Virus record (IMG/VR): IMGVR_UViG_3300042923_000569
Span: 124,001 to 188,000 of that record
Strand: one strand, 5' to 3'
Length of the DNA: 64,000 nucleotides
Shown here: piece after piece, positions 17,723 through 60,504 of the stretch
How the letters are laid out: each line of letters starts with the position of its first letter
Numbering within the stretch: position 1 is the first letter of the stretch
Notes under the pieces: model-generated
What the model was told of the DNA's origin: nothing
Database searches by the model: none
Seen by the model: only the letters and a program-made list of their open reading frames with translations
Made by a program: the position numbers and the translations under genes

Positions 17723-18988
17723 TTAATCTTCCGACTTTAGTAGATACTTGTTGTTAATAACTTTAAAGTGAACAGTACTGCCATTTACTTTTACAGTGCT
17801 TTTATATACATCACCTTCTGCGATAGGGTGAGTAATACTCGCATGATCAGCAGATGCTAGTGCTTCTTTAATAGATTCAAATTCTTTAAAGAAATAAACA
17901 ATATCACCTTGTGGAACCGTAGTAACACCTAGTGCAGCAGTAATTTCTAGGAAATCTGCATCATCTAAGAAGTTTTGATTATCGATATCCCAAATACGGA
18001 AACAATAGAACTGATGTTCTTCTAGCTGTTCGCGGTTACCCTGAATACCCGGTCCCATACATTCACCTTGCAAAGCAAGCTGGCGATCATACTTTTCGCA
18101 GTACTCTTTGAGACGTGCTGGAATATCATCTTTTAGTGCAGCTTTCCAGAATGCAGTACTTTCATCGAACTTCAATGCAAGATTGCGTGAGCAAACTACT
18201 ACTTGAGATTCCTGCCATTGGAACGGATAAGGTTTAACTTCAAGTACTTTAAGTTCTTGTAGTTCTTCATCCCACTCAACGACTTCATCATCAACTTTCT
18301 CAACAAAGAAATCTGGATTATTAAAGTACGCGATAGTCTGGCTAGAACCATCTAGTTTTAGAGACTTACGGAATGGAACATCCTGCATAGTCTGGCTAAA
18401 TTTACCAAATACGTTCTGAATACGATCTTCATCAGTTTTTGGAACTACTAGTGGGAAGTTGCCAGCAACTTTAGCTTTACCGGCACCAGTACCACCATTA
18501 CGTTCATCTGGACGTTCGTACTTAGTAACGTTTAAGTACTGCTCAATACCATGACGATTTTCTTCAAGATCACGAAGAATATCTTTTGCATTACCCATAA
18601 TAGTTTCAGCACTTGGCTGAAAGCAATACCTTACATTAGAATTAATACGATAGAAGAAATCTGCAAATGCAATTACTGGAAGTGCAAGTCCCTGGGAAAG
18701 TTGTTTCCTGAGCTTGATTGATTTCAACCGAATACGTTCAACACCATGTTCATCAGTTTTAGTTCCATTCTTAGAAAGGAAAGAAAAACGAGGATCATTT
18801 GCCGGAAGGAATGAATCAATCTCAAAGAATACACAGTAATCGCCGGGTGCAAATTCACCCTTTTTGATTACTACCTGCCAACCATCAATAGTTGCAACTT
18901 CAATTGCATCTGCACCATCAATAGGATTAACTTCTAGTACTTTGCGAATAGTTACTAGTTTGCGGCCTTCAGTTACTAACTCTGTCAT
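17723..18988 (-). CDS. RNA ligase, DRB0094/Rnl2-like family
   Basis: RKLVTIRKV, KLRKQLSQGL, KTDEDRIQN, KLDGSS (motif I), QGECMGPGIQGN, EGDVYK, FKVINNKYLL; start placed at MTELV. Confidence 0.9.
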   Translation of the reverse strand: MTELVTEGRKLVTIRKVLEVNPIDGADAIEVATIDGWQVVIKKGEFAPGDYCVFFEIDSFLPANDPRFSFLSKNGTKTDEHGVERIRLKSIKLRKQLSQGLALPVIAFADFFYRINSNVRYCFQPSAETIMGNAKDILRDLEENRHGIEQYLNVTKYERPDERNGGTGAGKAKVAGNFPLVVPKTDEDRIQNVFGKFSQTMQDVPFRKSLKLDGSSQTIAYFNNPDFFVEKVDDEVVEWDEELQELKVLEVKPYPFQWQESQVVVCSRNLALKFDESTAFWKAALKDDIPARLKEYCEKYDRQLALQGECMGPGIQGNREQLEEHQFYCFRIWDIDNQNFLDDADFLEITAALGVTTVPQGDIVYFFKEFESIKEALASADHASITHPIAEGDVYKSTVKVNGSTVHFKVINNKYLLKSED

Positions 18989-19005
18989 TATTTTTCTCTT
19001 TTTAA

Positions 19006-19335
19006 TTATTTTGTAGGAACTCGACGGTTCCACTTTTGCATTACTTCTTCCATTGAATCACCAATCAAAGACGCACCACAACCAAATTCACTTTCAAGAC
19101 AATTAAATGTCCAGTACATTCCACGTTCGGTAATATCTTTTTCTGAAACAAGTTGTAATGGAGAATGATGTGAATGCTTAATATCTAAATCTTCCCCAAA
19201 GCAATGAATATCCAATGGCGGGCATTTATACCAATGCATTCCCGTTGGATGTAAACTATCATGCAAGTTGTAGTGTCCAGGTTGGTTTCCACAAAACGGA
19301 CACGGCTTTATTTCACCTTTATAATGATGTTCCAT
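19006..19335 (-). CDS. Lar-like (restriction alleviation) zinc-ribbon protein
   Basis: IKPCPFCG...CGAS...EEVMQKWNRR. Confidence 0.5.
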   Translation of the reverse strand: MEHHYKGEIKPCPFCGNQPGHYNLHDSLHPTGMHWYKCPPLDIHCFGEDLDIKHSHHSPLQLVSEKDITERGMYWTFNCLESEFGCGASLIGDSMEEVMQKWNRRVPTK

Positions 19336-49794: not shown

Positions 49795-50016
49795 TTAACT
49801 CACAATAACAGTAAATGGTGCATAAGTGAATGCTAACCATAACAAGAAACCACCAATAGCAAACTGTGAAATTGGGAACAACCAACCACCGTTTCCGAAA
49901 GCTGCAACCATACGACATACGAATAGTCCAGTGATTATCATTCCTAAACCGACAATACTAAGTATTACAAATCCAATCCATGCTAAAATCATTTTAAACC
50001 TTCTTAGGGAAATCAA
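49795..50016 (-). CDS. small membrane protein
   Basis: Two TM segments; start probably ~49992. Confidence 0.65.
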   Translation of the reverse strand: MISLRRFKMILAWIGFVILSIVGLGMIITGLFVCRMVAAFGNGGWLFPISQFAIGGFLLWLAFTYAPFTVIVS

Positions 50017-50689
50017 TACGGAACTGAGTCATTAGTGAATTATGCAGTGGTTTGAACATTTCAATCATCTCTGCACAACGTTCTTCGATAGTACCAGTAG
50101 TTTCTTCGTACTTCGTTACTATTAGATTATGAATTTCATTGAGAGTTAAAATATCAATCTCTTTTTCAGTTTCGGAAACAGTTTTAATATAAAACCAGCG
50201 TGCATACAAAGGAAACTTGAAAGCGTGGAATAGATTTTTTAATCCAAGTACTTTATCGTAATCTTCAACTACTTGTAATTTCTTTTTACCTTTATCAAAG
50301 GCTTTAGATGTAATAGAACTAATACACGAACGAACTTCATGTAGTTCTTTACTTGATAATGCAAAATCAATATCTTTTTGCATTCCTGGGTTAGCCAGAC
50401 ATATAAAGTACTTAGGCTGAAGACTATTAAGTTCAGCTTCAAACGACTTACGTTGCATGAACTCTACATTAATAGTTAGTCCAGTAAATCCTAAAAAGAA
50501 GGACTTGTGACGCGGTTCAGGAGGTTCTTCATCTACGACAATGGTAACGTCAATATCATTAGGAACAACGTCAAAACCATGCATACGTTCGACATATGAG
50601 CCATATATGATGATATTATGGAAGCCTAATTCGTTGAAGTAATCAAAGATATGGTCAATAACAAACTGCTCTGATGGGTTAATCTTCAT
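49994..50689 (-). CDS. pol-beta superfamily nucleotidyltransferase
   Basis: IYGSYV...NDIDV; C-terminal KGKKK...LKNLFHAF helical domain. Confidence 0.7.
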   Translation of the reverse strand: MKINPSEQFVIDHIFDYFNELGFHNIIIYGSYVERMHGFDVVPNDIDVTIVVDEEPPEPRHKSFFLGFTGLTINVEFMQRKSFEAELNSLQPKYFICLANPGMQKDIDFALSSKELHEVRSCISSITSKAFDKGKKKLQVVEDYDKVLGLKNLFHAFKFPLYARWFYIKTVSETEKEIDILTLNEIHNLIVTKYEETTGTIEERCAEMIEMFKPLHNSLMTQFRIDFPKKV

Positions 50690-51468: not shown

Positions 51469-51711
51469 TTATTCCTTATATTTTGAACACAGTTGTCTTA
51501 ACTTCCTATTCAATTCTTCCGATGTACTGGCTGTAATTGAACCTATCTTTTTTGATTCAGATATTGTTCCCATTCGCACATCGAATTTATTATTATCAAA
51601 TGAATCAACAAACACGTACTTATTACTTGTGGTTGATTTAAATGAAGCAGAGTTATGTTCAATGCACATATCAAATTTAAACATTATTTTCTCAATTAAA
51701 AAGGGGAACAT
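51469..51711 (-). CDS. hypothetical protein
   Basis: 80-aa ORF. Confidence 0.55.
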   Translation of the reverse strand: MFPFLIEKIMFKFDMCIEHNSASFKSTTSNKYVFVDSFDNNKFDVRMGTISESKKIGSITASTSEELNRKLRQLCSKYKE

Positions 51712-51727
51712 AAAGTTCCCCTAACTG

Positions 51728-53155
51728 TTATAGATTTTCTTCTGCGAATGCAGCTAGAGGTGAACGTACTACACCTTCTAATTCAATGATACGACAACCT
51801 TCCCAATCTTTGAACTTTTCAGTTACATAAGTCAAACCACTATTAGTAGGACTGATGAACTTATTATCAATCTGAGATAAGTTACCCATGATGATCACTT
51901 TACAGTTTTCACCAGCACGAGTTAAAATAGTCTTTGCTTGAGCTGGCGTAATGTTCTGGAATTCATCAACAATCAAAATTGTATTAATGAAACTACGACC
52001 ACGAACAAAGTTCAATGCTTTAAACTGGAAGACATTACGTTTCATAATTTCTTCAATTGAACCTTGTGGATTTGCATCATCTTTATGCAAGTACTCTAAT
52101 GCATCAACTGCTGCACCACAGAATGGCATAACTTTTTCCATCTCTGAACCAGGTAAGAAACCAATTTCTTCAAATTGTGAATCCTGAGTTTTGGAGAAGA
52201 TAATGCGGTCATATTTCTTCTTCTCTAGAATTAACTCTAAAGAAGTTGCGATAGCGATTAATGTTTTACCTGTACCTGCTGAACCAAGAAGAATTGTAAT
52301 ATGTACATCTTTGTCCATGATACTGTTAATTGCCATTGCTTGCTGAATGTTCTTGGCTTTAATACCCCAAACTTTACGCGACAATGCTTTAGTCTGACCA
52401 ATGTCGTTTAAACAAACCATATCTCGGTCATCGTCATGTTCTAGTACTGAAGCATAACCTTCAAATACAAACAGACCATCAGCTTCATCATATAGATAAT
52501 CGCCAATACAAATATTATCTGGAAGAAGATGTTTGATATTTTCTTCTGGAATCATTTGTAGTAGCTTGTGACTATCCTGATTAGCATAGACTGTGCCACC
52601 GATTTGATCCCATAGTTTACCAGTAATTTCATGGTGTCCAGTATGGATTAGATCCGAATCTTCGATTGTTACATCATGACGATAATCCTGAACTTCTACA
52701 CCATATGCTAGTGCCTTGATACGCATGTTAATATCACGTGTTACAAGTACAGCTTGGGATAGTCGAGCAACTAGAATAATCTTGTCATCAGGTACAGTAC
52801 TTTTTACTAGAGTATCAAGCTTGTCATCATAGTTTTCACTTAGATGTGCAATTGCTTGAAGTTCCTCAACAGTTAGTACAAATAACTTTGTTTCGGGATT
52901 AATGTGAGGGTGAGTTTTGAAAATTTCAACACCAGTAGTTGAAATTTCTTCATGTGTTGCGTTTTCAAGAATAGTACTAATATTGCGGATTGCAACACGA
53001 GCATCACGTGAAATATCAACTTTACGACTCTTAATGGAATCTAATTCTTCAAGTACAGTGAACGGAAGAATTACATGTGCTCCATCAAATGCTAGGATTG
53101 CATGTGGATCACCAAGAATCACGTTTGTGTCAAGAACATATTTTTTCATAAACAT
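51728..53155 (-). CDS. phoH: PIN-PhoH (PhoH2-type) ATPase/RNase
   Basis: N-terminal PIN YVLDTNV; GSAGTGKT; RGRS; IVDEFQN. Confidence 0.93.
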   Translation of the reverse strand: MFMKKYVLDTNVILGDPHAILAFDGAHVILPFTVLEELDSIKSRKVDISRDARVAIRNISTILENATHEEISTTGVEIFKTHPHINPETKLFVLTVEELQAIAHLSENYDDKLDTLVKSTVPDDKIILVARLSQAVLVTRDINMRIKALAYGVEVQDYRHDVTIEDSDLIHTGHHEITGKLWDQIGGTVYANQDSHKLLQMIPEENIKHLLPDNICIGDYLYDEADGLFVFEGYASVLEHDDDRDMVCLNDIGQTKALSRKVWGIKAKNIQQAMAINSIMDKDVHITILLGSAGTGKTLIAIATSLELILEKKKYDRIIFSKTQDSQFEEIGFLPGSEMEKVMPFCGAAVDALEYLHKDDANPQGSIEEIMKRNVFQFKALNFVRGRSFINTILIVDEFQNITPAQAKTILTRAGENCKVIIMGNLSQIDNKFISPTNSGLTYVTEKFKDWEGCRIIELEGVVRSPLAAFAEENL

Positions 53156-53220
53156 CCTTTTTTTTGTTGAGTGTTAAAACACTTTGTTTTCCTAACAGTA
53201 TTTAATGTTCCTTTAAACTG

Positions 53221-53520
53221 TTAGTTTGAGCTGGGTTCGTAATTAACGTAGCAGCGATTACCTTTCGCTTCTTCGTACCAGCATTCTTGATAAACCAATT
53301 GGCCTATGCTAACTGGTTTATCGGTAGTACCATACTTCAGTTCATTGTTTTTGTCAGTGTATTGGTATGAACATTCACTCCCTTTACACTGACCCGTTGC
53401 AACAACCCGACCAACGTTATACGTCACATTGGTATGTTTACCACTTGGTATTTGCATTAACCCATACATGAATGATGTAAATACTACCGCATAGATTACA
53501 GACCAAATGAGACGTTTCAT
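53221..53520 (-). CDS. membrane-anchored hypothetical protein
   Basis: N-terminal TM helix; Cys-containing beta domain. Confidence 0.65.
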   Translation of the reverse strand: MKRLIWSVIYAVVFTSFMYGLMQIPSGKHTNVTYNVGRVVATGQCKGSECSYQYTDKNNELKYGTTDKPVSIGQLVYQECWYEEAKGNRCYVNYEPSSN

Positions 53521-53523
53521 AAC

Positions 53524-54417
53524 TTACAAACTCCGAATAAAATTAAAGGCATTATCTAAGTACGAAGAAATGTTCTTCGCACCAACAGGATTAGCACTAT
53601 GGACATTATATCCAAATACTTTTGCAATCTGTCGATCCATCATATAATCGATAAGATACTTACAGAATGTATAACCAGTTTCTTCATTTTCATTATCGGT
53701 ATCACCCAAATCATGGTCAAAAGAAACAAATTCAGGTAAACCATGTTGTTCAACGTACTTAACAGCTTCCTGATGAGTACGACAAACAACGAAACCTTCA
53801 CCTGGATAGTACTGTTCAACATCACGCAAATCATCCAAAAACATTTTGTATGACTGCTGTGTTTCACCAGTATAATCAATAAGAAGATTATTATCTTCTA
53901 CAAGTTTAATAAGTTCTTTCTTGGAGGTTCCTACGAAGTTCTGCTCCATAAGAACATTCCAGCCACATTCTACTTTACTCGCCTTAAGATAACGACAAAT
54001 ATGTAGTAAATTCACTCCAGCATTTTCAGCAGGAAAATGTTCACCGGTTACTGCGTTATTACGAATTTCCAGAAGTTCTTCATAAGATACCTCTAAAGAA
54101 AATGCATGATTGTGTACGTTAGTTGCCATGTTTTTATAGCTAACTAATGGTTTTAAACGTTCGATAGGAAGGTCATAGTTAATTTCTTCCTTAGCTTCTC
54201 GAACTACGGCAATTTCTAAACTTGGGTCATCTTTTTCTACTAAACCACCAACTGCACCTAATAAACCATCGAACCGTAATTCTGCAAGTACTAGACTTAC
54301 GTTAGGAATATCATTGTATGGATAATTTTTATATGGATTACAGTTCTTAGAAAAGATCCATACAAAGGCACAATCATAACGATTAGAGCGGGTGCCGAAA
54401 GGAATTTCCTGGTACAT
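53524..54417 (-). CDS. NUDT16-like Nudix hydrolase fused to a cyclic-phosphate-processing receiver-like domain
   Basis: LRFDGLLGAVGGLVE...SLEIAVVREAKEEI resembles NUDT16; C-terminal MFLDDLR...VSFDHDLG...VHSANPVG. Confidence 0.78.
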   Translation of the reverse strand: MYQEIPFGTRSNRYDCAFVWIFSKNCNPYKNYPYNDIPNVSLVLAELRFDGLLGAVGGLVEKDDPSLEIAVVREAKEEINYDLPIERLKPLVSYKNMATNVHNHAFSLEVSYEELLEIRNNAVTGEHFPAENAGVNLLHICRYLKASKVECGWNVLMEQNFVGTSKKELIKLVEDNNLLIDYTGETQQSYKMFLDDLRDVEQYYPGEGFVVCRTHQEAVKYVEQHGLPEFVSFDHDLGDTDNENEETGYTFCKYLIDYMMDRQIAKVFGYNVHSANPVGAKNISSYLDNAFNFIRSL

Positions 54418-54425
54418 ATATTGCC

Positions 54426-55199
54426 TTAATTATTTGTTGACATACGAGCAGTTACGTAGTCATTTAATGTTCCAAGAACATCACCAATTGGACTGTAAAG
54501 ATTGTAACTGAAATGATCGTCTTTATCATGTGGTTCTGGATTAATATTAACAGTTTGTGAAGCTGTTGCTAATCCTGCATATACTGACCACGGAATTACA
54601 CTATCAGATGAACCGATAATAATGAAAGTATCGCGTGCATTTGCACTATCAAGTACTTTATAAAGTTCGTTATAGATTGGTTTACGAACACCATTGTCAA
54701 ACCAGAATGTTTCACCAAACATTACAATATTAGGTTTAGAAACAATACCTGGGGTTGGTGTAAATTCAGTATAACCAATATCAGTCACTTCATAATCTTC
54801 AGAGTTTACTGAAAACGGACTAACTACCTCAGTTAAACGACCATGAACATGCATTGCAGATCCACCAGCACGTTCAGCTAAGTCATCAACATTAGCAGTA
54901 ATATGAATTACTCGGTCATCACCATATAGTTTCTGCATACGTTCAATGAAATAATGTCCTGGGTTTGGTTCAAAATTTTGAAGGCCAACACGCATTTTAT
55001 TATAAAAGTTATGTACTGCATCGTAGTGAGTCATGAAGTGTGCAATATTACAAACAATATCAACACTTACGTTATCCCACAATCCATCACCTGCTGCATC
55101 ACGGAAAGTAGGGATACCAGATTCTTTTGACAGACCCGCTCCAGTACAGAAAATCAGTCGTGGCGTTTCATTATTTTGCAAAAAACTATTGAGATTCAT
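54426..55199 (-). CDS. sirtuin (Sir2/CobB family) NAD+-dependent enzyme
   Basis: TGAGLSKESGIPTFRD, HITANVDDLAERAG, HVHG, PNIVMFGE, IIGSS, INP. Confidence 0.93.
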   Translation of the reverse strand: MNLNSFLQNNETPRLIFCTGAGLSKESGIPTFRDAAGDGLWDNVSVDIVCNIAHFMTHYDAVHNFYNKMRVGLQNFEPNPGHYFIERMQKLYGDDRVIHITANVDDLAERAGGSAMHVHGRLTEVVSPFSVNSEDYEVTDIGYTEFTPTPGIVSKPNIVMFGETFWFDNGVRKPIYNELYKVLDSANARDTFIIIGSSDSVIPWSVYAGLATASQTVNINPEPHDKDDHFSYNLYSPIGDVLGTLNDYVTARMSTNN

Positions 55200-55207
55200 T
55201 GTTTACC

Positions 55208-55426
55208 TTAAAGGTGTGAAAAGTAAAGTCGGCAACCACAGTTTGGACATTGTGGTTCCTTAATATAATATCCGTCAGTACCGGGTACGGAACGCGGAGC
55301 ATCTTTTATTACATAAACTTTGAAGCACTTAAAACAAGTAACTTCTTTATCGGCTTGGGGATGATCATCAACCCAATCACCACTATAAAGCCATTTCTGA
55401 TGTTCCGTTAAATCCCCATACTTCAT
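55208..55426 (-). CDS. small zinc-ribbon protein
   Basis: CFKC...CPNCG. Confidence 0.6.
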   Translation of the reverse strand: MKYGDLTEHQKWLYSGDWVDDHPQADKEVTCFKCFKVYVIKDAPRSVPGTDGYYIKEPQCPNCGCRLYFSHL

Positions 55427-55437
55427 TATAAGCTCAC

Positions 55438-55884
55438 TTAAATTGTAGTCTTATTATATTCATTACCAAAGATTAGTTCTTCTGGTAATACGCCAAGTTT
55501 ATAAATTAGTTCAATTAAATCTTCGTCAGTATCTTTTGGTTGGTACACAATACTCATATGGCATTTGTAACCGGGAAATTTATGTGTAAATCCAGCATTA
55601 AGTAATTCTTTATGACGCTGTTCAATTTCAGGTGAATCAAGAAGTAGTACTATTGCTTCCCATTCCCCACCGGGTTTTCCCAACCTTTCAATTCCAGTAA
55701 TCTTCGCTTTATATGTACTATCATTTTGAAGTAAATTTATTTGAGGATTGCTTTCATCTTGCATTAAGGTAACATGAAATTTAGCTGCTGTCAAGCAATC
55801 AATGCCCGCTAGTTTAAATATTTTTCTGATTTCTTTAGCCTGATCAATATCAAGCTTTAGGCTTACAAATCCTTTTCCAGCCAT
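55438..55884 (-). CDS. acb1: anti-CBASS 2H phosphodiesterase (Acb1 / T4 gp57B-like)
   Basis: FHVTL...IVLLLDSPEIEQRH...GFTHKFPGYKCHMSIVY aligns by eye with T4 Acb1 IHST...LVLDSEYLRCRH...GATHDFDDYTPHITLSY. Confidence 0.82.
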   Translation of the reverse strand: MAGKGFVSLKLDIDQAKEIRKIFKLAGIDCLTAAKFHVTLMQDESNPQINLLQNDSTYKAKITGIERLGKPGGEWEAIVLLLDSPEIEQRHKELLNAGFTHKFPGYKCHMSIVYQPKDTDEDLIELIYKLGVLPEELIFGNEYNKTTI

Positions 55885-55896
55885 GAGTAATATCCT

Positions 55897-56091
55897 TTAC
55901 ATAGTTAAAATTAAATAACCTAACAATACTACAAGGATACCTGCAATAATTGCAAGTAAAACTGCACTAACTACATATAGTACTTTTTTATTTTTAGTAA
56001 ATGTAGAACGCTTAGCTTTATATTCAGAGAATGTAAGCCAAAGTATAATTACATACGTAATAACAGATACAACTAGCATTGTGGTTAACAT
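55897..56091 (-). CDS. small membrane protein
   Basis: Two TM segments. Confidence 0.65.
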   Translation of the reverse strand: MLTTMLVVSVITYVIILWLTFSEYKAKRSTFTKNKKVLYVVSAVLLAIIAGILVVLLGYLILTM

Positions 56092-56112: not shown

Positions 56113-56138
56113 TAAAAAGAAGGGGGCATAAGCCCCCT
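56113..56138 (-). terminator. intrinsic terminator after nampt
   Basis: AGGGGGC-UUAU-GCCCCCU plus U-rich tail. Confidence 0.8.
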
Positions 56139-56143
56139 AAAAA

Positions 56144-57628
56144 TTACAAACCTTTGTTTGCACGTTCACGTACTTCATCGAAGTTACTGAGATTCATAAT
56201 CTCACCATTAACGTACACATCAACCATCATATCACGTAGGAATGGGTTGACTTCTTGTAGTTCAATACGCTCTGCAATAATCTTGTGAGTATTAGTACAC
56301 TCATAAGTAGTGACACGACCACGTAAAGAACGCTTGCCTACATCAGTGATCGGATCTTTGAATAAATCTTCCCAAACACCAGTGTTTAGCTGTTGTGCTG
56401 AACCTTTCATTGCGAAGCTGTAAGTATCGCGACCTTTTTCTGGATGTACTAACTTACCACCCATACCAAATACGATGTTAGAAAGACAAATCTTTTTAGC
56501 TTCAATATTTGCAACAATCTGACGGATACTGTCTTCGTTGATACCATCACCCTGAATCACTCCAATGAATGAAGGTAATTCTTTATAACCATTTGCGTTT
56601 ACAGTAGAACCAAACTTCTCCATCAAAATCTCAGTGATTTCAATTGGCATTGTTAGTGGATCACCGCTATCTGGACGAAGAACTAACTTAGCTCCAGGGC
56701 AAAGTGCTGCGATTTCCATAATGGTAGCTTTCAAACGAGTACCAATGTATTCGCGGGTAAAACGATATGCATCATAGGTATCAATCACTACTGATACGAT
56801 TGGTGGAACACCAATTGAACCTTTAGCAATATATGCACGTACTTTCATTTCCCACAAACGAACCATCTTAACTGCCATATTAAAGTCGTCGCGTTTGTCT
56901 GCGTCTGAGTTAGAACATGTTGCACTATGCTCACTCGCAGTAACTGAACTCAAATATGCATTAGTTGTGTGGTAGTATTGTTTAATGTAACGGTTAGCAC
57001 TTAGACAATCAGAACCGTTGAACAATGCCGCATGTGCCATACCTGCAATAATTGCAGATTCGAAGCTTGAAGCTCCGCGATCACCGAAGTTATGCAAGTG
57101 ATAGTCCACAAAGCGAGAGCCAGTATGACGCTCCATTGTATCAGCTAAGAATTCTTTAATGCTACGTGCATTACTAGCAACTGTAGTTGGGAACCAAACA
57201 CCACGCTGAAGCTGAGTTTCAATGTAGCTTGCAATTACACAAACACGCGGATCAGTACTGAAAGAACGTACTAATGGACTACCAACAGGAACTAACGTAC
57301 CTTCTGGAATTGCACGAATATGTAATGGAATTTTACCTCCATGTACTTCTACAATGTGTTCCCAAAAACCGCGATCAAAATCATCGCCACGTTGTTCAGT
57401 TTCTAGCTGTGCTTCGTCAATGTCATCAGTAGTGATGCTAATATCTAAGTACTCTTGTAGATAGTACTGTAGACCCATCATCACAACATGTGTTGCGTAC
57501 TTACTTGGTTTACGTGCAATGATATTTGATTCAAGAGCTACAACACCCTCTTTCATCATAAAACCGTGACCAGTTTTGTACGAATCGACATTTAAAATAA
57601 AGTTTACATTTTTGTTAATTTTGTTCAT
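56144..57628 (-). CDS. nadV: nicotinamide phosphoribosyltransferase (Nampt/NadV)
   Basis: NVDSYK, HNFGDRG, ASEHS, VVIDTYD, LVLRPDSG, VIQGDG, VFGMGG, KDPITDVGKRS. Confidence 0.95.
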   Translation of the reverse strand: MNKINKNVNFILNVDSYKTGHGFMMKEGVVALESNIIARKPSKYATHVVMMGLQYYLQEYLDISITTDDIDEAQLETEQRGDDFDRGFWEHIVEVHGGKIPLHIRAIPEGTLVPVGSPLVRSFSTDPRVCVIASYIETQLQRGVWFPTTVASNARSIKEFLADTMERHTGSRFVDYHLHNFGDRGASSFESAIIAGMAHAALFNGSDCLSANRYIKQYYHTTNAYLSSVTASEHSATCSNSDADKRDDFNMAVKMVRLWEMKVRAYIAKGSIGVPPIVSVVIDTYDAYRFTREYIGTRLKATIMEIAALCPGAKLVLRPDSGDPLTMPIEITEILMEKFGSTVNANGYKELPSFIGVIQGDGINEDSIRQIVANIEAKKICLSNIVFGMGGKLVHPEKGRDTYSFAMKGSAQQLNTGVWEDLFKDPITDVGKRSLRGRVTTYECTNTHKIIAERIELQEVNPFLRDMMVDVYVNGEIMNLSNFDEVRERANKGL

Positions 57629-57686: not shown

Positions 57687-58202
57687 TTATACCAAATTCT
57701 GTACTAAAATTTTTGGAATTAATGCCATTAGATTGTGTGGTTCAAACATATACTCACCAAATCTTACGTAAGAATACATTGCATATGGATTAATCTTTTC
57801 AATTGCGATTTCATCAATAGAAAAAGCATATGTATCACCAAACTCATCATAAGTAGTGAATAACATTTCATCATCGACAAAAATTATATCGCTTCGTCGA
57901 GGTTTTGCGATGTATACAAAAGCACTATCTGAAAATGCAAAGTAAACCTGCATAAATTTATGTTCTTTACTTACTTCAAGTGAGTTGTAAACACCATATG
58001 TTCTAATAGCAAATATTTTATTATCTTCATTATCTGCCGGTTGATTAACTATCATCTGCAACAGATATGAAATTGGTTCTATGTGTGTAATACCAGTTGG
58101 TAGTTTATATTCAGACAAAGATAACTTTTGTAAAAAAGTTTGCTGATTATCTGAAATGTACTTCATTTCATGATAAAAACTATCTGGCTGGCAGTACAAC
58201 AT
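57687..58202 (-). CDS. hypothetical protein between the two NAD salvage genes
   Basis: 171-aa ORF. Confidence 0.6.
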   Translation of the reverse strand: MLYCQPDSFYHEMKYISDNQQTFLQKLSLSEYKLPTGITHIEPISYLLQMIVNQPADNEDNKIFAIRTYGVYNSLEVSKEHKFMQVYFAFSDSAFVYIAKPRRSDIIFVDDEMLFTTYDEFGDTYAFSIDEIAIEKINPYAMYSYVRFGEYMFEPHNLMALIPKILVQNLV

Positions 58203-58245: not shown

Positions 58246-59361
58246 TTAAAGAATACCTAAGAAAGTATCAATAATACTTAAATGATCTTCAAAGAACTTA
58301 TCACGGTTCTGAACTAATTCACCAAGTGGCATCCAGAATGCTTTTTCAGCATCATCTGCACCTTTAACTTTAGGTAATGTATTATCCTGAAGTTGAATGT
58401 ATGCACATTTAGTAATGATACGCCAGCGTTGGGAACGATTGAAATCACCAAACTCCATACTTTCACGGATTGAACCTTCAAGTACTTTCATTGGAACATC
58501 AATCTTTGTTTCTTCTTTTAATTCACGTAAAGCAGTTTGAATTTGATCTTTATCCTGCCAAGCGTCAAAGAACCCACCGGGTAGAGCATATAAACCTTTA
58601 CCTGGGAAAGTGCGGCGTTTAACAAGAAGAATGTGACCTGCACTGATTACCATTGCGTCACCCGTTAAGAACGGAATGTTGTTATATGGTAAACGTTCAT
58701 TCATCTCTGCACGATAACGTTGAACAAAGTTAAACTCGCCAATTAGATTATCAAAAATTACTGGTTTAGTTTGCATGAACTTACCAAGAAATTCTTGTGT
58801 TTCTTCTGGTAATGATTCAGGAATCTGTTTAGTACTGAAAAATTGATTACGAACTTCGGTACTATTAATCGTAATAGGATTTGATTCTGCGTCCTTCTCA
58901 CGATATTGCTGAGGAATACCAGCTTGCGATTTCTTAACTTCACCAATGAAATCCTGTTGCCATTGTGGGAAGAAGTTAAGATAAAAAGTACTTTCATCTG
59001 CTTCTTTCTGACAACCAGTAATTACAATGTTATCGCTTGAAGTAACGGACTTAACTTGTTCGTGTACTTCCATCAACCATTTGCTGTTGTTATATACATA
59101 ATCGTGGATTGGTAAGATATTAATCTTAACCGAACGCCCTTTAGCCCACTCTTCTTGAACTAAACGATTAGACATAGCATCCAGTACCTGACGGCGTTCT
59201 TCAAACGAAAACGGATTTTTTGAATCACGTGCAAGCTCCGAACTACCAACAAGAATTACCAAACGGTCTGCATTTTCTAATGCATGTTTAATGGTTGCTT
59301 CATGACCTGTGTGTGCCATTTGGAAACGACCAATATACACATATACTTTTTCTTTACTCAT
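58246..59361 (-). CDS. nadM: bifunctional NMN adenylyltransferase / ADP-ribose pyrophosphatase (NadM-Nudix)
   Basis: YIGRFQMAHTGH (HxGH), KNPFSFEER, NSTEVR; Nudix LPGGF...ALRELKEET; DDAEKAFW. Confidence 0.94.
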   Translation of the reverse strand: MSKEKVYVYIGRFQMAHTGHEATIKHALENADRLVILVGSSELARDSKNPFSFEERRQVLDAMSNRLVQEEWAKGRSVKINILPIHDYVYNNSKWLMEVHEQVKSVTSSDNIVITGCQKEADESTFYLNFFPQWQQDFIGEVKKSQAGIPQQYREKDAESNPITINSTEVRNQFFSTKQIPESLPEETQEFLGKFMQTKPVIFDNLIGEFNFVQRYRAEMNERLPYNNIPFLTGDAMVISAGHILLVKRRTFPGKGLYALPGGFFDAWQDKDQIQTALRELKEETKIDVPMKVLEGSIRESMEFGDFNRSQRWRIITKCAYIQLQDNTLPKVKGADDAEKAFWMPLGELVQNRDKFFEDHLSIIDTFLGIL

Positions 59362-59598: not shown

Positions 59599-60504
59599 AT
59601 GGGAAAACCAATTGCTGGTCGTAATAAATCCCCATTCGGAGTAGATGGCATTAATGTTGATGCTGCTGTACTTGCCGATGGTACAAAATTAACTAATATT
59701 CGTATTAGTAAACAACGTTCTGCTAACGTATTTGATCTAATGAGTGTTGATGGACTAACTGTATATCCGTTCATCGAAATCACTGGTGTTGATAAAAATG
59801 GTGCAGCGTTAGACGTTTCTGCAACAGCCGCAGATCTTTCTGATAGTATTTCTCCAGGAAGTTTCTGTATTAGTGCTGTAGATTCAAATGGTGATGTTGC
59901 TGGATTCGCAGTGAAACTATTACTTAATAAAGTAATTCTACAAAATGGTAGTGCTTTGTTTATGACTGATTATACTAGTCAAGGTCAGGTAATTGTTGCT
60001 GTAACTTCAGTAGCTGTATCTCCACTTACTGCTGCTATCCGTGTAGGGGCAACTCAACAACTTACTGCTACTATTGCACCTGCTGATGCAACTAATAAGT
60101 CTGTAACTTGGGTTTCAAGTGCACCTGCTATCGCTACTGTAAGTGCTACCGGTTTAGTATCTGGTGTTGCTAACGGTACTGCTAACGTAACTGTTACCTC
60201 TGTTGATGGTTCATTTACTAGTGTTTCTGCTATTACTGTAAGTACTGCCGTAACTGGTGTTACTATGACTCCAGATACCGTAACTTTAAGTCTAGCTGGT
60301 ACAACTACACAACAACTAACAGCTACTGTAGCTCCTGCTTCAGCATCTGTTAAGACTGTTACTTATGTTTCATCAGCACCTGCTGTTGCAACTGTAAGTG
60401 CATCTGGTCTAGTTACTGCTGTTTCTGCCGGAACTGCAACTATTACTGTTACAACTACTGATGGTTCATTCACTGACACTACTTCAGTTACTGTTACTGC
60501 ATAA
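59599..60504 (+). CDS. virion surface protein with two tandem Ig-like (Big_2) domains
   Basis: Only credible plus-strand gene; QQLTATIAPADATNKSVTWVSS and QQLTATVAPASASVKTVTYVSS; AGGAG RBS, TAAATA motif, terminator. Confidence 0.88.
   Translation: MGKPIAGRNKSPFGVDGINVDAAVLADGTKLTNIRISKQRSANVFDLMSVDGLTVYPFIEITGVDKNGAALDVSATAADLSDSISPGSFCISAVDSNGDVAGFAVKLLLNKVILQNGSALFMTDYTSQGQVIVAVTSVAVSPLTAAIRVGATQQLTATIAPADATNKSVTWVSSAPAIATVSATGLVSGVANGTANVTVTSVDGSFTSVSAITVSTAVTGVTMTPDTVTLSLAGTTTQQLTATVAPASASVKTVTYVSSAPAVATVSASGLVTAVSAGTATITVTTTDGSFTDTTSVTVTA

What the first reader, a model, noticed from the sequence alone, without database searches (positions are those of the whole stretch)
53524..54417. 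NUDT16-like Nudix hydrolase fused to a cyclic-phosphate-processing receiver domain
Seen in sequence: the N-terminal LRFDGLLGAVGGLVE...SLE..VVREAKEEI and the later NFVGTSKKEL segment resemble animal NUDT16 more than typical bacterial Nudix proteins. The C-terminus (FLDDLR...VSFDHDLG...HSAN) is a receiver-like domain predicted to act in RNA end processing. Established: NUDT16 decaps RNA and trims protein ADP-ribosylation. Inference: a phage enzyme that reverses ADP-ribosylation or capping by host defences and heals RNA ends. I am not aware of this fusion being characterised.
Basis: partly seen in the sequence, partly recalled or inferred. Interest (0 to 1): 0.62.

Follow-up and report, generated by a model that had tools for sequence, protein, structure and literature searches.

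The report
Phage NUDT16-like Nudix fused to cREC
A jumbo phage gene really does fuse an animal-NUDT16-type Nudix pyrophosphatase to a stripped-down receiver-like "cREC" domain, but this fusion and its sirtuin-linked neighbourhood were already described computationally in a close relative in 2022, and its biochemistry is still untested.

Summary
ORF 53524-54417 (minus strand, 297 aa) has a NUDT16-family Nudix domain (residues 31-179) and a cREC domain (190-289), both far above the Pfam cut-offs. Sequence and fold searches put human NUDT16 and Xenopus X29 well ahead of any bacterial Nudix. cREC is a four-strand receiver-like fold, and no close homologue has a solved structure. The fusion is genuine. 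About 20 fused homologues exist, four independent metagenomes show no indels in the ORF, and relatives with separate genes keep them adjacent.

It is not new as an architecture. Iyer, Burroughs, Anantharaman and Aravind (Viruses 2022) describe this neighbourhood (sirtuin, 2H, Nudix, cREC, PIN) and the fusion in Serratia phage BF, whose protein is 71% identical. I found no experimental work on cREC.

Context favours a sirtuin-linked, NAD-dependent role in RNA-end or ADP-ribose-phosphate processing. An unrelated phage (Murica) has RNA ligase, cREC, Sir2 and a non-homologous pyrophosphohydrolase in one operon. A T5-like phage pairs the same sirtuin clade with an RNA-repair HAD phosphatase. Other phages pair cREC with polynucleotide-kinase-like genes.

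NUDT16-type cleavage leaves a phosphoribosyl stub, so it trims rather than reverses. Interest is moderate.

The parts
53524..54417 (-). Whole gene: 297-aa Nudix-cREC fusion protein (P0001)
   Evidence: ORF list and translation; Pfam; intact with no indels in contigs from 4 independent studies
53881..54327 (-). NUDT16-family Nudix domain, residues 31-179
   Evidence: PF22327 66 bits; phmmer human NUDT16 E 5e-10; Foldseek top 39 hits all NUDT16/X29/TIRR; phrog_9999 nudix hydrolase E 6e-87
54178..54258 (-). Nudix box, residues 54-80 (GAVGGLVEKDDPSLEIAVVREAKEEIN). R73, E74, E77 and E78 are invariant.
   Evidence: Invariant in 18 homologues. They align to NUDT16 R75, E76, E79 and E80 in the phmmer alignment. 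E131 aligns to NUDT16 E136.
53851..53880 (-). Inter-domain linker, residues 180-189
   Evidence: pLDDT below 50 at residues 185-187. It corresponds to the stop codon, 21-nt spacer and new start in phage 121Q, where the two halves are separate genes.
53551..53850 (-). cREC domain, residues 190-289. Conserved pocket residues are D195, D196, D234, H235, D236, H273, S274 and N276.
   Evidence: PF20274 81.5 bits; invariant columns in 45 cREC sequences; AF2 pLDDT 94.5; receiver-like fold with VIA Z 9.3 and Foldseek E 1.7e-3
54426..55199 (-). CobB-like sirtuin, 8 nt upstream of the fusion gene. It keeps GAGxSxESGIPTFR and HVHG but lacks the zinc-ribbon cysteines.
   Evidence: PF02146 E 1e-23; E. coli CobB E 2.5e-24 with alignment; adjacent in BF and 121Q
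53221..53520 (-). 99-aa membrane protein, 3 nt downstream; conserved member of the module
   Evidence: phrog_14661 membrane protein E 4e-39; conserved in BF and 121Q
51728..53155 (-). PIN-PhoH fusion (PhoH2-like RNase/ATPase); last gene of the unit
   Evidence: PF13638 PIN_4 E 3e-22 and PF02562 PhoH E 5e-45; conserved in BF and 121Q
55438..55884 (-). Acb1-family 2H phosphoesterase, in the same terminator-bracketed unit
   Evidence: PF23474 Acb1 58.5 bits; PDB Acb1 9q2g E 4e-5; phrog_755
55208..55426 (-). 72-aa phage zinc-binding protein between Acb1 and Sir2
   Evidence: PF23903 E 2e-22
56144..57628 (-). NAMPT (nicotinamide phosphoribosyltransferase); first enzyme of a NARP2-type pair
   Evidence: PF04095 and PF18127; NARP2 defined in bioRxiv 10.1101/2024.02.11.579819
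58246..59361 (-). NMNAT-Nudix bifunctional enzyme; second NARP2-type enzyme and a second, ordinary Nudix
   Evidence: PF01467 and PF00293; 81% identical to BF_0106, annotated NMNAT/ADP-ribose pyrophosphatase
56121..56138 (-). Terminator-like hairpin after NAMPT; upstream boundary of the seven-gene unit
   Evidence: Consensus scan, 7 pairs with 6 GC
51702..51722 (-). Terminator-like hairpin after PIN-PhoH; downstream boundary of the unit
   Evidence: Consensus scan, 8 pairs with 5 GC

Best explanation
The gene encodes a two-domain enzyme of a GAP32/CBB-like jumbo phage. The enzyme belongs to a conserved module made of a sirtuin, a Nudix, cREC, a small membrane protein and PIN-PhoH. Shown: the N-terminal half is a NUDT16-family Nudix pyrophosphatase with an intact catalytic glutamate set. 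The C-terminal half is a cREC domain, a four-strand receiver-like fold with an invariant Asp/His/Ser pocket. The two halves are either fused or encoded by adjacent genes in all relatives found. Inferred: the module is an NAD-dependent system for processing RNA ends and ADP-ribose phosphates, as Iyer et al. proposed in 2022. [quoted passage not shown] The NUDT16-like half then cleaves the ADP-ribose pyrophosphate to give AMP and a phosphoribose derivative. That would clear the by-product and could feed the neighbouring NAMPT/NMNAT NAD-salvage genes. Fusing the two halves would channel two consecutive steps on one ADP-ribose-phosphate molecule.
For: Domain identity and intact catalytic residues. 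Coupling of the two halves: about 20 fused and 20 split homologues. The split genes are adjacent in 121Q and RaK2-type phages. The tree shows at least two fusion/fission changes, with the main split clade nested among fused lineages. The sirtuin is always immediately upstream, with 8-nt and 3-nt gene spacings inside a unit bracketed by terminator-like hairpins. Independent contexts in unrelated phages: Vequintavirus Murica has T4-type RNA ligase, cREC (E 2e-14), Sir2 and a non-homologous nucleotide pyrophosphohydrolase (phrog_671) in one operon, with a divergent PNK-like AAA_33 kinase and a calcineurin-type phosphoesterase. T5-like Bf23 pairs the same Sir2 clade with the RNA-repair phosphatase HAD_SAK_2. 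Acinetobacter phage 313 has an NAD-salvage pair, cREC and a polynucleotide kinase. Aeromonas T4-like phages have a CCA-adding enzyme, cREC and a Walker-A kinase-like protein. The phage's own genome encodes Rnl1 and Pnkp. NUDT16 cleaves the ADP-ribose pyrophosphate whatever it is attached to (PMC8883491, PMC12879935). The proposal itself is in PMC9503650 and PMC7824862.
Against: No enzyme of the module has been assayed; everything about substrates is guilt by association. In this phage Rnl1 and Pnkp lie about 23 kb away, not in the module. T4-type Pnkp already removes 2',3'-cyclic phosphates on its own (established knowledge), so a second route is not obviously needed. The sirtuin is closest to CobB deacylases, and nothing shows that it can ADP-ribosylate an RNA phosphate. 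PIN nucleases leave 3'-OH ends rather than cyclic phosphates (established knowledge). The '2H' neighbour now matches the anti-CBASS Acb1 family, which weakens its reading as an RNA-repair part. Synteny among BF, GAP32 and 121Q may partly reflect shared ancestry. The sirtuin clade occurs in 1,002 phage records but cREC matches in only 136, so most of these sirtuins work without cREC.
Confidence: 0.4

Rival explanations
1. One reading: the enzyme is a counter-defence eraser. The NUDT16-like half trims ADP-ribose or NAD-type caps that host defences such as DarT or CmdT put on phage DNA, RNA or protein. cREC removes the remaining terminal phosphate or heals the RNA ends.
For: The Nudix half belongs specifically to the NUDT16 family. 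NUDT16 acts on conjugated ADP-ribose whatever the linkage, including on DNA. The gene shares a transcription unit with an Acb1-family anti-CBASS enzyme and lies next to a NARP2-type anti-NADase pathway.
Against: NUDT16-type cleavage leaves a phosphoribosyl stub, so it does not restore the target. Known counter-DarT enzymes are Macro (DarG) or NADAR types, as cited. This hypothesis does not explain the invariant link to the phage's own sirtuin. In 121Q the module lacks the Acb1 and NARP2 neighbours.
Confidence: 0.18
2. The enzyme degrades immune signals. The Nudix half cleaves the pyrophosphate of NAD-derived second messengers (Thoeris gcADPR isomers, His-ADPR, N7-cADPR), with cREC processing a phosphate-containing product. 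This would parallel Acb1 acting on CBASS signals.
For: It is co-transcribed with Acb1. PMC7824862 also suggested that cREC processes cADPr or cyclic nucleotides. Phages are known to use enzymes and sponges against such signals (list).
Against: No known signal-degrading enzyme is of the Nudix or cREC type in the papers found. cREC's contexts in unrelated phages are RNA ligase, kinase and phosphoesterase genes. The partnership with the sirtuin is left unexplained.
Confidence: 0.12
3. The enzyme does housekeeping for a deacylating sirtuin. The CobB-like Sir2 deacylates host or phage proteins. The Nudix-cREC enzyme then destroys the O-acyl-ADP-ribose by-product, replacing the Macro or Ysa1-type enzymes used elsewhere, and nicotinamide is recycled by NAMPT.
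For: The sirtuin's best matches are CobB deacylases, with the canonical NAD-binding and HG motifs. Hydrolysis of O-acetyl-ADP-ribose by Nudix enzymes is established for Ysa1 and NUDT5 (my own knowledge). No Macro gene is linked to the module (noted in PMC9503650). NAMPT is adjacent.
Against: It gives no role to an Asp-based receiver-like phosphoesterase. It does not explain why cREC and the sirtuin sit beside RNA ligase and PNK-like kinases in other phages. The phage already has an ADP-ribose-type Nudix fused to NMNAT.
Confidence: 0.12
4. The enzyme is an RNA decapping and turnover factor. Like NUDT16, X29 or RppH, the Nudix half would convert NAD-capped or triphosphate 5' ends to 5'-monophosphate. 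cREC would trim 3' phosphates. Together with PIN-PhoH this would speed host mRNA decay or prepare ends for ligation.
For: NUDT16 and X29 are decapping enzymes (titles of the top PDB hits). The module ends in a PIN-PhoH RNase/ATPase. A NARP2 pathway that raises NAD levels could increase NAD-capping; that last step is my inference.
Against: No RNA-binding feature was tested. The sirtuin's role is unexplained. In Murica a MazG-like pyrophosphohydrolase occupies the Nudix position, and that family is known for free-nucleotide substrates (my own knowledge).
Confidence: 0.1

Closest known systems
Nudix-cREC fusion of Serratia phage BF (BF_0113, AQW88638.1) and its Sir2/2H/Nudix/cREC/PIN neighbourhood, described in Iyer et al., Viruses 2022 (PMC9503650, section 3.7.3, Fig. 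5f)
   Same: It is an orthologue at 71% identity over the full length. The gene order is the same: NMNAT-Nudix, NAMPT, 2H/Acb1, Zn-binding protein, Sir2, Nudix-cREC, membrane protein, PIN-PhoH.
   Different: Nothing of substance differs; the window is another phage of the same group. It is closest to Pectobacterium phage CBB and Cronobacter phage GAP32 at about 78%. The 2022 paper does not mention the NUDT16 affinity of the Nudix half (0 occurrences).
Human NUDT16 and Xenopus X29 (U8 snoRNA-decapping enzyme; PDB 3COU, 2XSQ, 5W6X, 6X7U, 1U20)
   Same: The fold matches (TM 0.8 on the target, E 1e-14), and the sequence match is direct (E 5e-10). The Nudix-box glutamates, the RFDG motif and the extra glutamate (E131 aligned to E136) are conserved.
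   Different: Identity is only about 22-24%. NUDT16 Q170 aligns to a Glu here. The host is a phage, the domain is fused to cREC, and no activity is known.
Stand-alone phage cREC proteins (PF20274), for example in Vequintavirus Murica, Aeromonas T4-like phages, Acinetobacter phages, and the split gene of 121Q/RaK2
   Same: The conserved DD, FD(H/N)D and H(S/T)xNP motifs are the same, and so is the predicted fold (ESM Atlas TM 0.88).
   Different: Here the domain is fused to a Nudix. Elsewhere it is a protein of about 100-130 aa next to RNA ligase, kinase or phosphoesterase genes.
Response-regulator receiver domains (CheY, Spo0A, PhoP)
   Same: The flavodoxin-like fold is shared, with acidic residues at the C-terminal ends of strands 1 and 3 (VIA Z 8-9.3, rmsd 2.2-2.8 over about 88 residues).
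   Different: cREC has only four beta/alpha units, and alignments stop near receiver residue 100. There is no conserved Lys. Invariant His and Asn residues are added. Identity is 7-18%, and Foldseek gives only E 2e-3.
T4 Pnkp (kinase plus HAD phosphatase) and yeast/plant Trl1-Tpt1-Cpd1 tRNA ligation chemistry
   Same: The proposed logic is analogous: an Asp-based phosphoesterase heals the 3' end, and an NAD-dependent step removes a 2'-phosphate and produces ADP-ribose cyclic phosphate (PMC6097658 abstract).
   Different: The folds are unrelated: cREC versus HAD or 2H, and sirtuin versus Tpt1. None of these steps has been shown for the phage proteins.

Membership tests
NUDT16-like Nudix family (Pfam PF22327) | Profile match above the curated gathering score | tested here: met
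   66 bits against a cut-off of 27, covering profile positions 13-161 of 161
NUDT16-like Nudix family (Pfam PF22327) | Nudix fold closest to NUDT16/X29 rather than other Nudix clades | tested here: met
   Foldseek ranks 1-39 are all NUDT16, X29 or TIRR at E 2e-14 to 8e-11; the next hit (CoA pyrophosphatase) scores 2.5e-7. phmmer gives NUDT16 5e-10 against 0.49 for the best bacterial Nudix.
NUDT16-like Nudix family (Pfam PF22327) | Catalytic Nudix-box REx2EE glutamates plus the extra metal-binding Glu (NUDT16 E76, E79, E80, E136) | tested here: met
   R73, E74, E77, E78 and E131 are invariant in 18 homologues and align to those NUDT16 positions. This separates the protein from the inactive paralogue TIRR only by inference.
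NUDT16-like Nudix family (Pfam PF22327) | Pyrophosphatase activity on caps, IDP or (conjugated) ADP-ribose | not testable with these tools
   Needs enzyme assays
cREC (Pfam PF20274, cyclic-phosphate processing receiver domain) | Profile match above the curated gathering score over the whole model | tested here: met
   81.5 bits against a cut-off of 27, profile positions 1-88 of 88
cREC (Pfam PF20274, cyclic-phosphate processing receiver domain) | Conserved acidic pair after strand 1, the FD(H)D motif after strand 3, and HSxNP after strand 4 | tested here: met
   D195, D196, D234, D236, H273, S274 and N276 correspond to invariant columns in 45 sequences. H235 is replaced by Asn in Murica and in the tandem paralogues.
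cREC (Pfam PF20274, cyclic-phosphate processing receiver domain) | Receiver-like Rossmannoid fold | tested here: met
   AF2 pLDDT 94.5. Almost all of the VIA top 50 are receiver domains, Z up to 9.3. Foldseek hits are all receivers but weak.
cREC (Pfam PF20274, cyclic-phosphate processing receiver domain) | Cyclic-phosphate phosphoesterase activity (the function in the family name) | not testable with these tools
   It is a prediction in PMC7824862 and PMC9503650. I found no experimental paper.
Two-component response-regulator receiver (signalling REC) | Five beta/alpha units with a conserved Lys after strand 5, and a histidine-kinase partner | tested here: not met
   The model has four strands and four helices. 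Structural alignments end near receiver residue 100. No invariant Lys is present. No kinase gene lies in the neighbourhood.
Sirtuin-centred phage RNA-repair neighbourhood, type 1 (Iyer et al. 2022) | [quoted passage not shown] | tested here: met
   All five lie within 51728-55884 on one strand, in the same order as in phage BF.
Sirtuin-centred phage RNA-repair neighbourhood, type 1 (Iyer et al. 2022) | Actual function in RNA repair (ligase-coupled end healing) | tested here: inconclusive
   Rnl1 and Pnkp exist in the genome but about 23 kb away. The type 2 (Murica) and type 3 (Bf23) contexts do link the sirtuin and cREC to RNA ligase and an RNA-repair HAD phosphatase. No biochemistry is available.

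The most novel reading that the evidence does not exclude
Nudix-cREC could be a new kind of RNA end-healing enzyme, the functional counterpart of T4 Pnkp for blocked ends. In this reading the NUDT16-like half converts NAD-, ADP-ribose- or polyphosphate-capped 5' ends to ligatable 5'-monophosphates. cREC, an Asp-based receiver-fold phosphoesterase with no characterised member, converts 2',3'-cyclic or 2'/3'-phosphate ends to hydroxyls. The adjacent sirtuin replaces Tpt1/KptA. Together they would give phages a yeast-like, NAD-dependent RNA repair route built from unrelated folds.
Probability: 0.15. Interest if true: 0.75.

Novelty: new member of a known kind. Interest (0 to 1): 0.4.

Why it matters
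cREC is reported in up to 18% of jumbo phages (PMC9503650), and I found no experimentally characterised member and no solved structure of a close homologue. The partner sirtuin clade occurs in about 1,000 sequenced phages, including T5-like and rV5-like model phages. A defined activity for this fusion would assign function to a widespread phage module at the meeting point of NAD metabolism, RNA damage and anti-phage defence. It would also test whether a receiver fold has been re-used as a hydrolase.

Tried and rejected
- Pfam scans of ten unannotated genes flanking stand-alone cREC in eight unrelated phages gave no hits.
- I suspected that the ~250-aa neighbours in Aeromonas and Acinetobacter phages were divergent sirtuins. 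BLASTP showed no similarity to the window's Sir2. The Aeromonas protein instead starts with a Walker A motif, and the Acinetobacter one stays unknown.
- The two tandem cREC paralogues at genome position ~300 kb lie among unknown small genes, so their context says nothing.
- The ESM Atlas feature and shape searches returned only cREC clusters and one cREC+DUF5522 fusion, with no functional lead.
- The NARP3 paper and the Klebsiella vB_KP_P4 paper proved irrelevant to this gene.
- RtcB is absent from the genome.
- No run listed as holding this stretch is on record as RNA, so expression could not be checked.
- I did not run the 1.84-billion-protein profile search.
- I did not run complex prediction, because I do not claim a physical complex.
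- I did not use the third word search. The full-length and cREC-only searches already covered the length ranges of fused, split and stand-alone forms.
- Inter-domain geometry could not be judged. pTM is 0.65 and the tool returns no PAE or coordinates.
Full report
**Observation**

All the motifs quoted are present at residues 47-61, 73-78, 160-169, 193-198, 232-238 and 273-276. Pfam assigns residues 31-179 to Nudt16-like (PF22327, 66 bits, cut-off 27). It assigns residues 190-289 to cREC_REC (PF20274, 81.5 bits, cut-off 27). The generic NUDIX model matches only weakly (E 3e-6). These matches are far beyond chance.

**Is the Nudix half really NUDT16-like?**

Yes, by two independent tests.

- Sequence: phmmer against all PDB chain sequences finds human NUDT16 at E 5e-10, aligned over residues 34-179 of the query and 36-181 of the 195-residue enzyme. 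Xenopus X29 scores 8e-7 and the inactive paralogue TIRR 5e-3. The best bacterial Nudix reaches only E 0.49.
- Structure: an AlphaFold2 model built on 21 homologues has mean pLDDT 86. Foldseek ranks 1-39 are exclusively NUDT16, X29 or TIRR/syndesmos (E 2e-14 to 8e-11, TM about 0.8 normalised on the target). After that the scores jump to 2.5e-7 for a CoA pyrophosphatase.

In the phmmer alignment R73, E74, E77 and E78 match NUDT16 R75, E76, E79 and E80. R48-F49-D50-G51 match R50-F51-D52-G53, and E131 matches E136. All of these residues are invariant in 18 phage homologues. The domain therefore looks catalytically competent, unlike TIRR.

**What is the C-terminal half?**

An alignment of 45 cREC sequences has 12 invariant columns. 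In full-length numbering the polar ones are D195, D196, D234, D236, H273, S274 and N276, and the window's protein has every invariant residue. The domain folded alone gives pLDDT 94.5 and four beta/alpha units.

Foldseek finds only response-regulator receiver domains, and those weakly (best E 1.7e-3). An exhaustive VIA-align search of 48,161 chains again returns almost only receivers (Z up to 9.3, rmsd 2.2-2.8 over about 88 residues). The alignments end near receiver residue 100.

So the fold is receiver-like, but the domain is not a signalling receiver. The fifth beta/alpha unit and the conserved Lys are missing, invariant His and Asn residues are added, and no histidine kinase is nearby. No close homologue has a solved structure. 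The activity in the family's name, 'cyclic-phosphate processing', is a prediction from comparative genomics (PMC7824862 and PMC9503650). Four literature searches found no experimental work on it.

**Is the fusion real?**

- The word search finds about 20 fused proteins of 293-310 aa and about 20 Nudix-only proteins of 184-191 aa, all from large phage contigs.
- Complete genomes of Pectobacterium phage CBB, Cronobacter phage GAP32 (both about 78% identical), Erwinia phage pEa_SNUABM_47, Serratia phage BF and the Yersinia fHe-Yen9 phages carry the fused gene.
- In 121Q/PBECO4-type phages (Asteriusvirus) and in RaK2 the same two halves match two adjacent annotated genes. In 121Q the two genes are 21 nt apart.
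- A maximum-likelihood tree of the Nudix halves places the main split clade (18 sequences, support 99/97) inside the fused lineages. Well-supported branches force at least two changes of state. The root is a midpoint root only, and two long-branch split sequences are poorly placed.
- Contigs from four independent studies (runs found in soil, phyllosphere, food, insect-gut and plant samples) cover the whole ORF with substitutions only. Every indel lies in the 53158-53213 spacer downstream.
- The model's low-confidence linker (residues 185-187) coincides with the position of the intergenic spacer in the split forms.

**Genome and neighbourhood**

The window is positions 124,001-188,000 of a complete 357,873-bp phage genome with direct terminal repeats. 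In transcription order on the minus strand the genes are:

| Coordinates | Gene |
|---|---|
| 58246-59361 | NMNAT-Nudix |
| 57687-58202 | unknown |
| 56144-57628 | NAMPT |
| 55897-56091 | 64-aa hydrophobic protein |
| 55438-55884 | Acb1-family 2H phosphoesterase |
| 55208-55426 | phage zinc-binding protein |
| 54426-55199 | sirtuin |
| 53524-54417 | the fusion gene |
| 53221-53520 | 99-aa membrane protein |
| 51728-53155 | PIN-PhoH |

Spacings around the fusion gene are 8 and 3 nt. Terminator-like hairpins lie just after NAMPT (56138-56121) and just after PIN-PhoH (51722-51702). They bracket a seven-gene unit; this is a consensus scan only.

NAMPT plus NMNAT is the composition of the experimentally defined NARP2 pathway, which rebuilds NAD against NAD-depleting defences (bioRxiv 10.1101/2024.02.11.579819). 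The sirtuin is closest to E. coli CobB (E 2.5e-24). It keeps the GAGxSxESGIPTFR and HxHG motifs but has lost the zinc-ribbon cysteines. It is not of the defence-NADase type.

Comparing the window with BF and 121Q, the conserved core is Sir2, Nudix and cREC, membrane protein, PIN-PhoH. The NAD-salvage genes and Acb1 are adjacent only in the BF/GAP32-like lineage.

**Prior description**

Iyer, Burroughs, Anantharaman and Aravind (Viruses 2022, PMC9503650, section 3.7.3 and Fig. [quoted passage not shown] The window's protein is 71% identical to that BF protein, in the same gene order. The same group named cREC in 2021 (PMC7824862). GAP32's orthologue already carries the cREC name in UniRef. The architecture is therefore known. 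This gene is a further member, and what remains open is the biochemistry. The 2022 paper does not mention NUDT16, so the specific NUDT16 affinity of the Nudix half is a small addition that Pfam already captures.

**Independent contextual tests made here**

- In Vequintavirus Murica one operon reads T4-type RNA ligase (PF09511), cREC (PF20274, E 2e-14), Sir2, and a nucleotide pyrophosphohydrolase (phrog_671, no Nudix). A divergent PNK-like AAA_33 kinase and a calcineurin-type phosphoesterase sit beside it. This is a Sir2 + cREC + pyrophosphatase trio rebuilt with a non-homologous pyrophosphatase. It is the strongest evidence that the three activities belong together and relate to RNA ligation.
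- In the T5-like phage Bf23 the same sirtuin clade sits two genes upstream of a HAD_SAK_2 'Swiss-army-knife' RNA-repair phosphatase, with no cREC in between. This suggests that cREC and a HAD phosphatase fill equivalent roles.
- In Acinetobacter phage 313 cREC lies between an NAD-salvage-type pair and a polynucleotide kinase.
- In Aeromonas T4-like phages cREC lies between a CCA-adding enzyme with an HD hydrolase and a protein that starts with a Walker A motif.
- Other stand-alone cREC genes lie near calcineurin-type phosphoesterases, a Macro-domain gene or phosphoribosyltransferases.
- The window's own genome encodes T4-type Rnl1 and Pnkp, but about 23 kb from the module. It also has a PF09414 ligase and no RtcB.
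- The sirtuin clade is present in 1,002 phage records, against 136 with a cREC match, so most of these sirtuins work without cREC.

**Mechanism**

The best-supported reading (confidence 0.4) is the sirtuin-centred, NAD-dependent processing of RNA ends and ADP-ribose phosphates proposed in 2022.

- The sirtuin acts as a Tpt1/KptA analogue on a 2'-phosphate.
- The NUDT16-like half cleaves the ADP-ribose pyrophosphate.

Shown here: domain identities, conserved active-site residues, obligatory adjacency or fusion, and recurrent association with RNA ligase, kinase and phosphatase genes. Inferred: every substrate and the order of steps. NUDT16's known ability to cut the ADP-ribose pyrophosphate whatever the ADP-ribose is attached to fits an enzyme that must handle ADP-ribose carrying extra phosphates or still attached to RNA.

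Points against this reading:

- The ligase is distant in this phage.
- T4-type Pnkp already heals cyclic ends.
- The sirtuin is CobB-like.
- PIN nucleases leave hydroxyl ends.
- The '2H' neighbour now matches the anti-CBASS Acb1 family.

Four rivals keep appreciable weight:

- degradation of NAD-derived immune signals (0.12);
- disposal of O-acyl-ADP-ribose from a deacylating sirtuin (0.12);
- RNA decapping for turnover (0.1).

**Verdict**

The gene is a new member of a known, computationally described but experimentally uncharacterised kind. Interest is moderate at 0.4. A specialist would recognise the module, but a first activity and structure for cREC, and a test of the sirtuin-as-Tpt1 idea, would be worthwhile and are directly testable in culturable relatives.

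Noticed in passing
Own genome G000:C1:299955-300607 (locus L018 6887-7608, minus strand); outside the window: Two further stand-alone cREC paralogues lie in tandem (119 and 121 aa; PF20274 E 8e-10 and 3e-8). They keep the DD pair and H-S but have D-N in place of D-H-D. The surrounding small genes have no family match.
   Followed up: partly
window 56144-57628 and 58246-59361 (minus strand): NAMPT and a bifunctional NMNAT-Nudix together match the composition of the experimentally defined NARP2 NAD-reconstitution pathway. Each is followed by its own terminator-like hairpin.
   Followed up: partly
window 55438-55884 (minus strand): The 148-aa 2H phosphoesterase matches the Acb1 anti-CBASS family (Pfam 58.5 bits; PDB Acb1 9q2g E 4e-5). 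The 2022 paper treated this '2H' gene as an RNA-repair part. It may instead be an anti-CBASS enzyme.
   Followed up: partly
window 53158-53213: All indels among contigs from four independent metagenomes cluster in this spacer between the 99-aa membrane gene and PIN-PhoH. The coding regions differ by substitutions only.
   Followed up: no
Own genome, locus L019 3207-5995 (G000 about 199.2-202.0 kb): A T4-type tRNA repair pair is present: Pnkp (AAA_33 kinase plus HAD_PNKP, E 1e-46) and Rnl1 (RNA_lig_T4_1 plus T4_Rnl1_C). A weak HD_4 match and a cytidylyltransferase-like gene lie nearby.
   Followed up: partly
Locus L018 3702-5135 (minus strand; G000 about 296.7-298.1 kb): A 477-aa phage protein ends in a YadA-like membrane anchor domain (E 1.4e-19). 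That domain is unusual for a phage gene.
   Followed up: no
window 17723-19033 (minus strand): A 436-aa ORF matches the PF09414 RNA_ligase family (E 5e-20). It could be an Rnl2-type or a DNA-ligase-type enzyme; I did not resolve which.
   Followed up: no
window 49994-50689 (minus strand): A 231-aa protein has weak Pol-beta nucleotidyltransferase and DUF6932 matches (E about 1e-3). It is conserved in phage BF at 60% identity.
   Followed up: no
window 59599-60504 (plus strand): An Ig-like (Big_2) protein is the only plus-strand gene in this otherwise minus-strand block. Its BF counterpart is annotated as an Ig domain-containing protein.
   Followed up: no
Locus L021 6496-7326 (Escherichia phage Bf23): Two tandem DUF7415 proteins follow the Sir2 and HAD_SAK_2 genes in this T5-like phage. 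They are of unknown function but may belong to the same sirtuin module.
   Followed up: no
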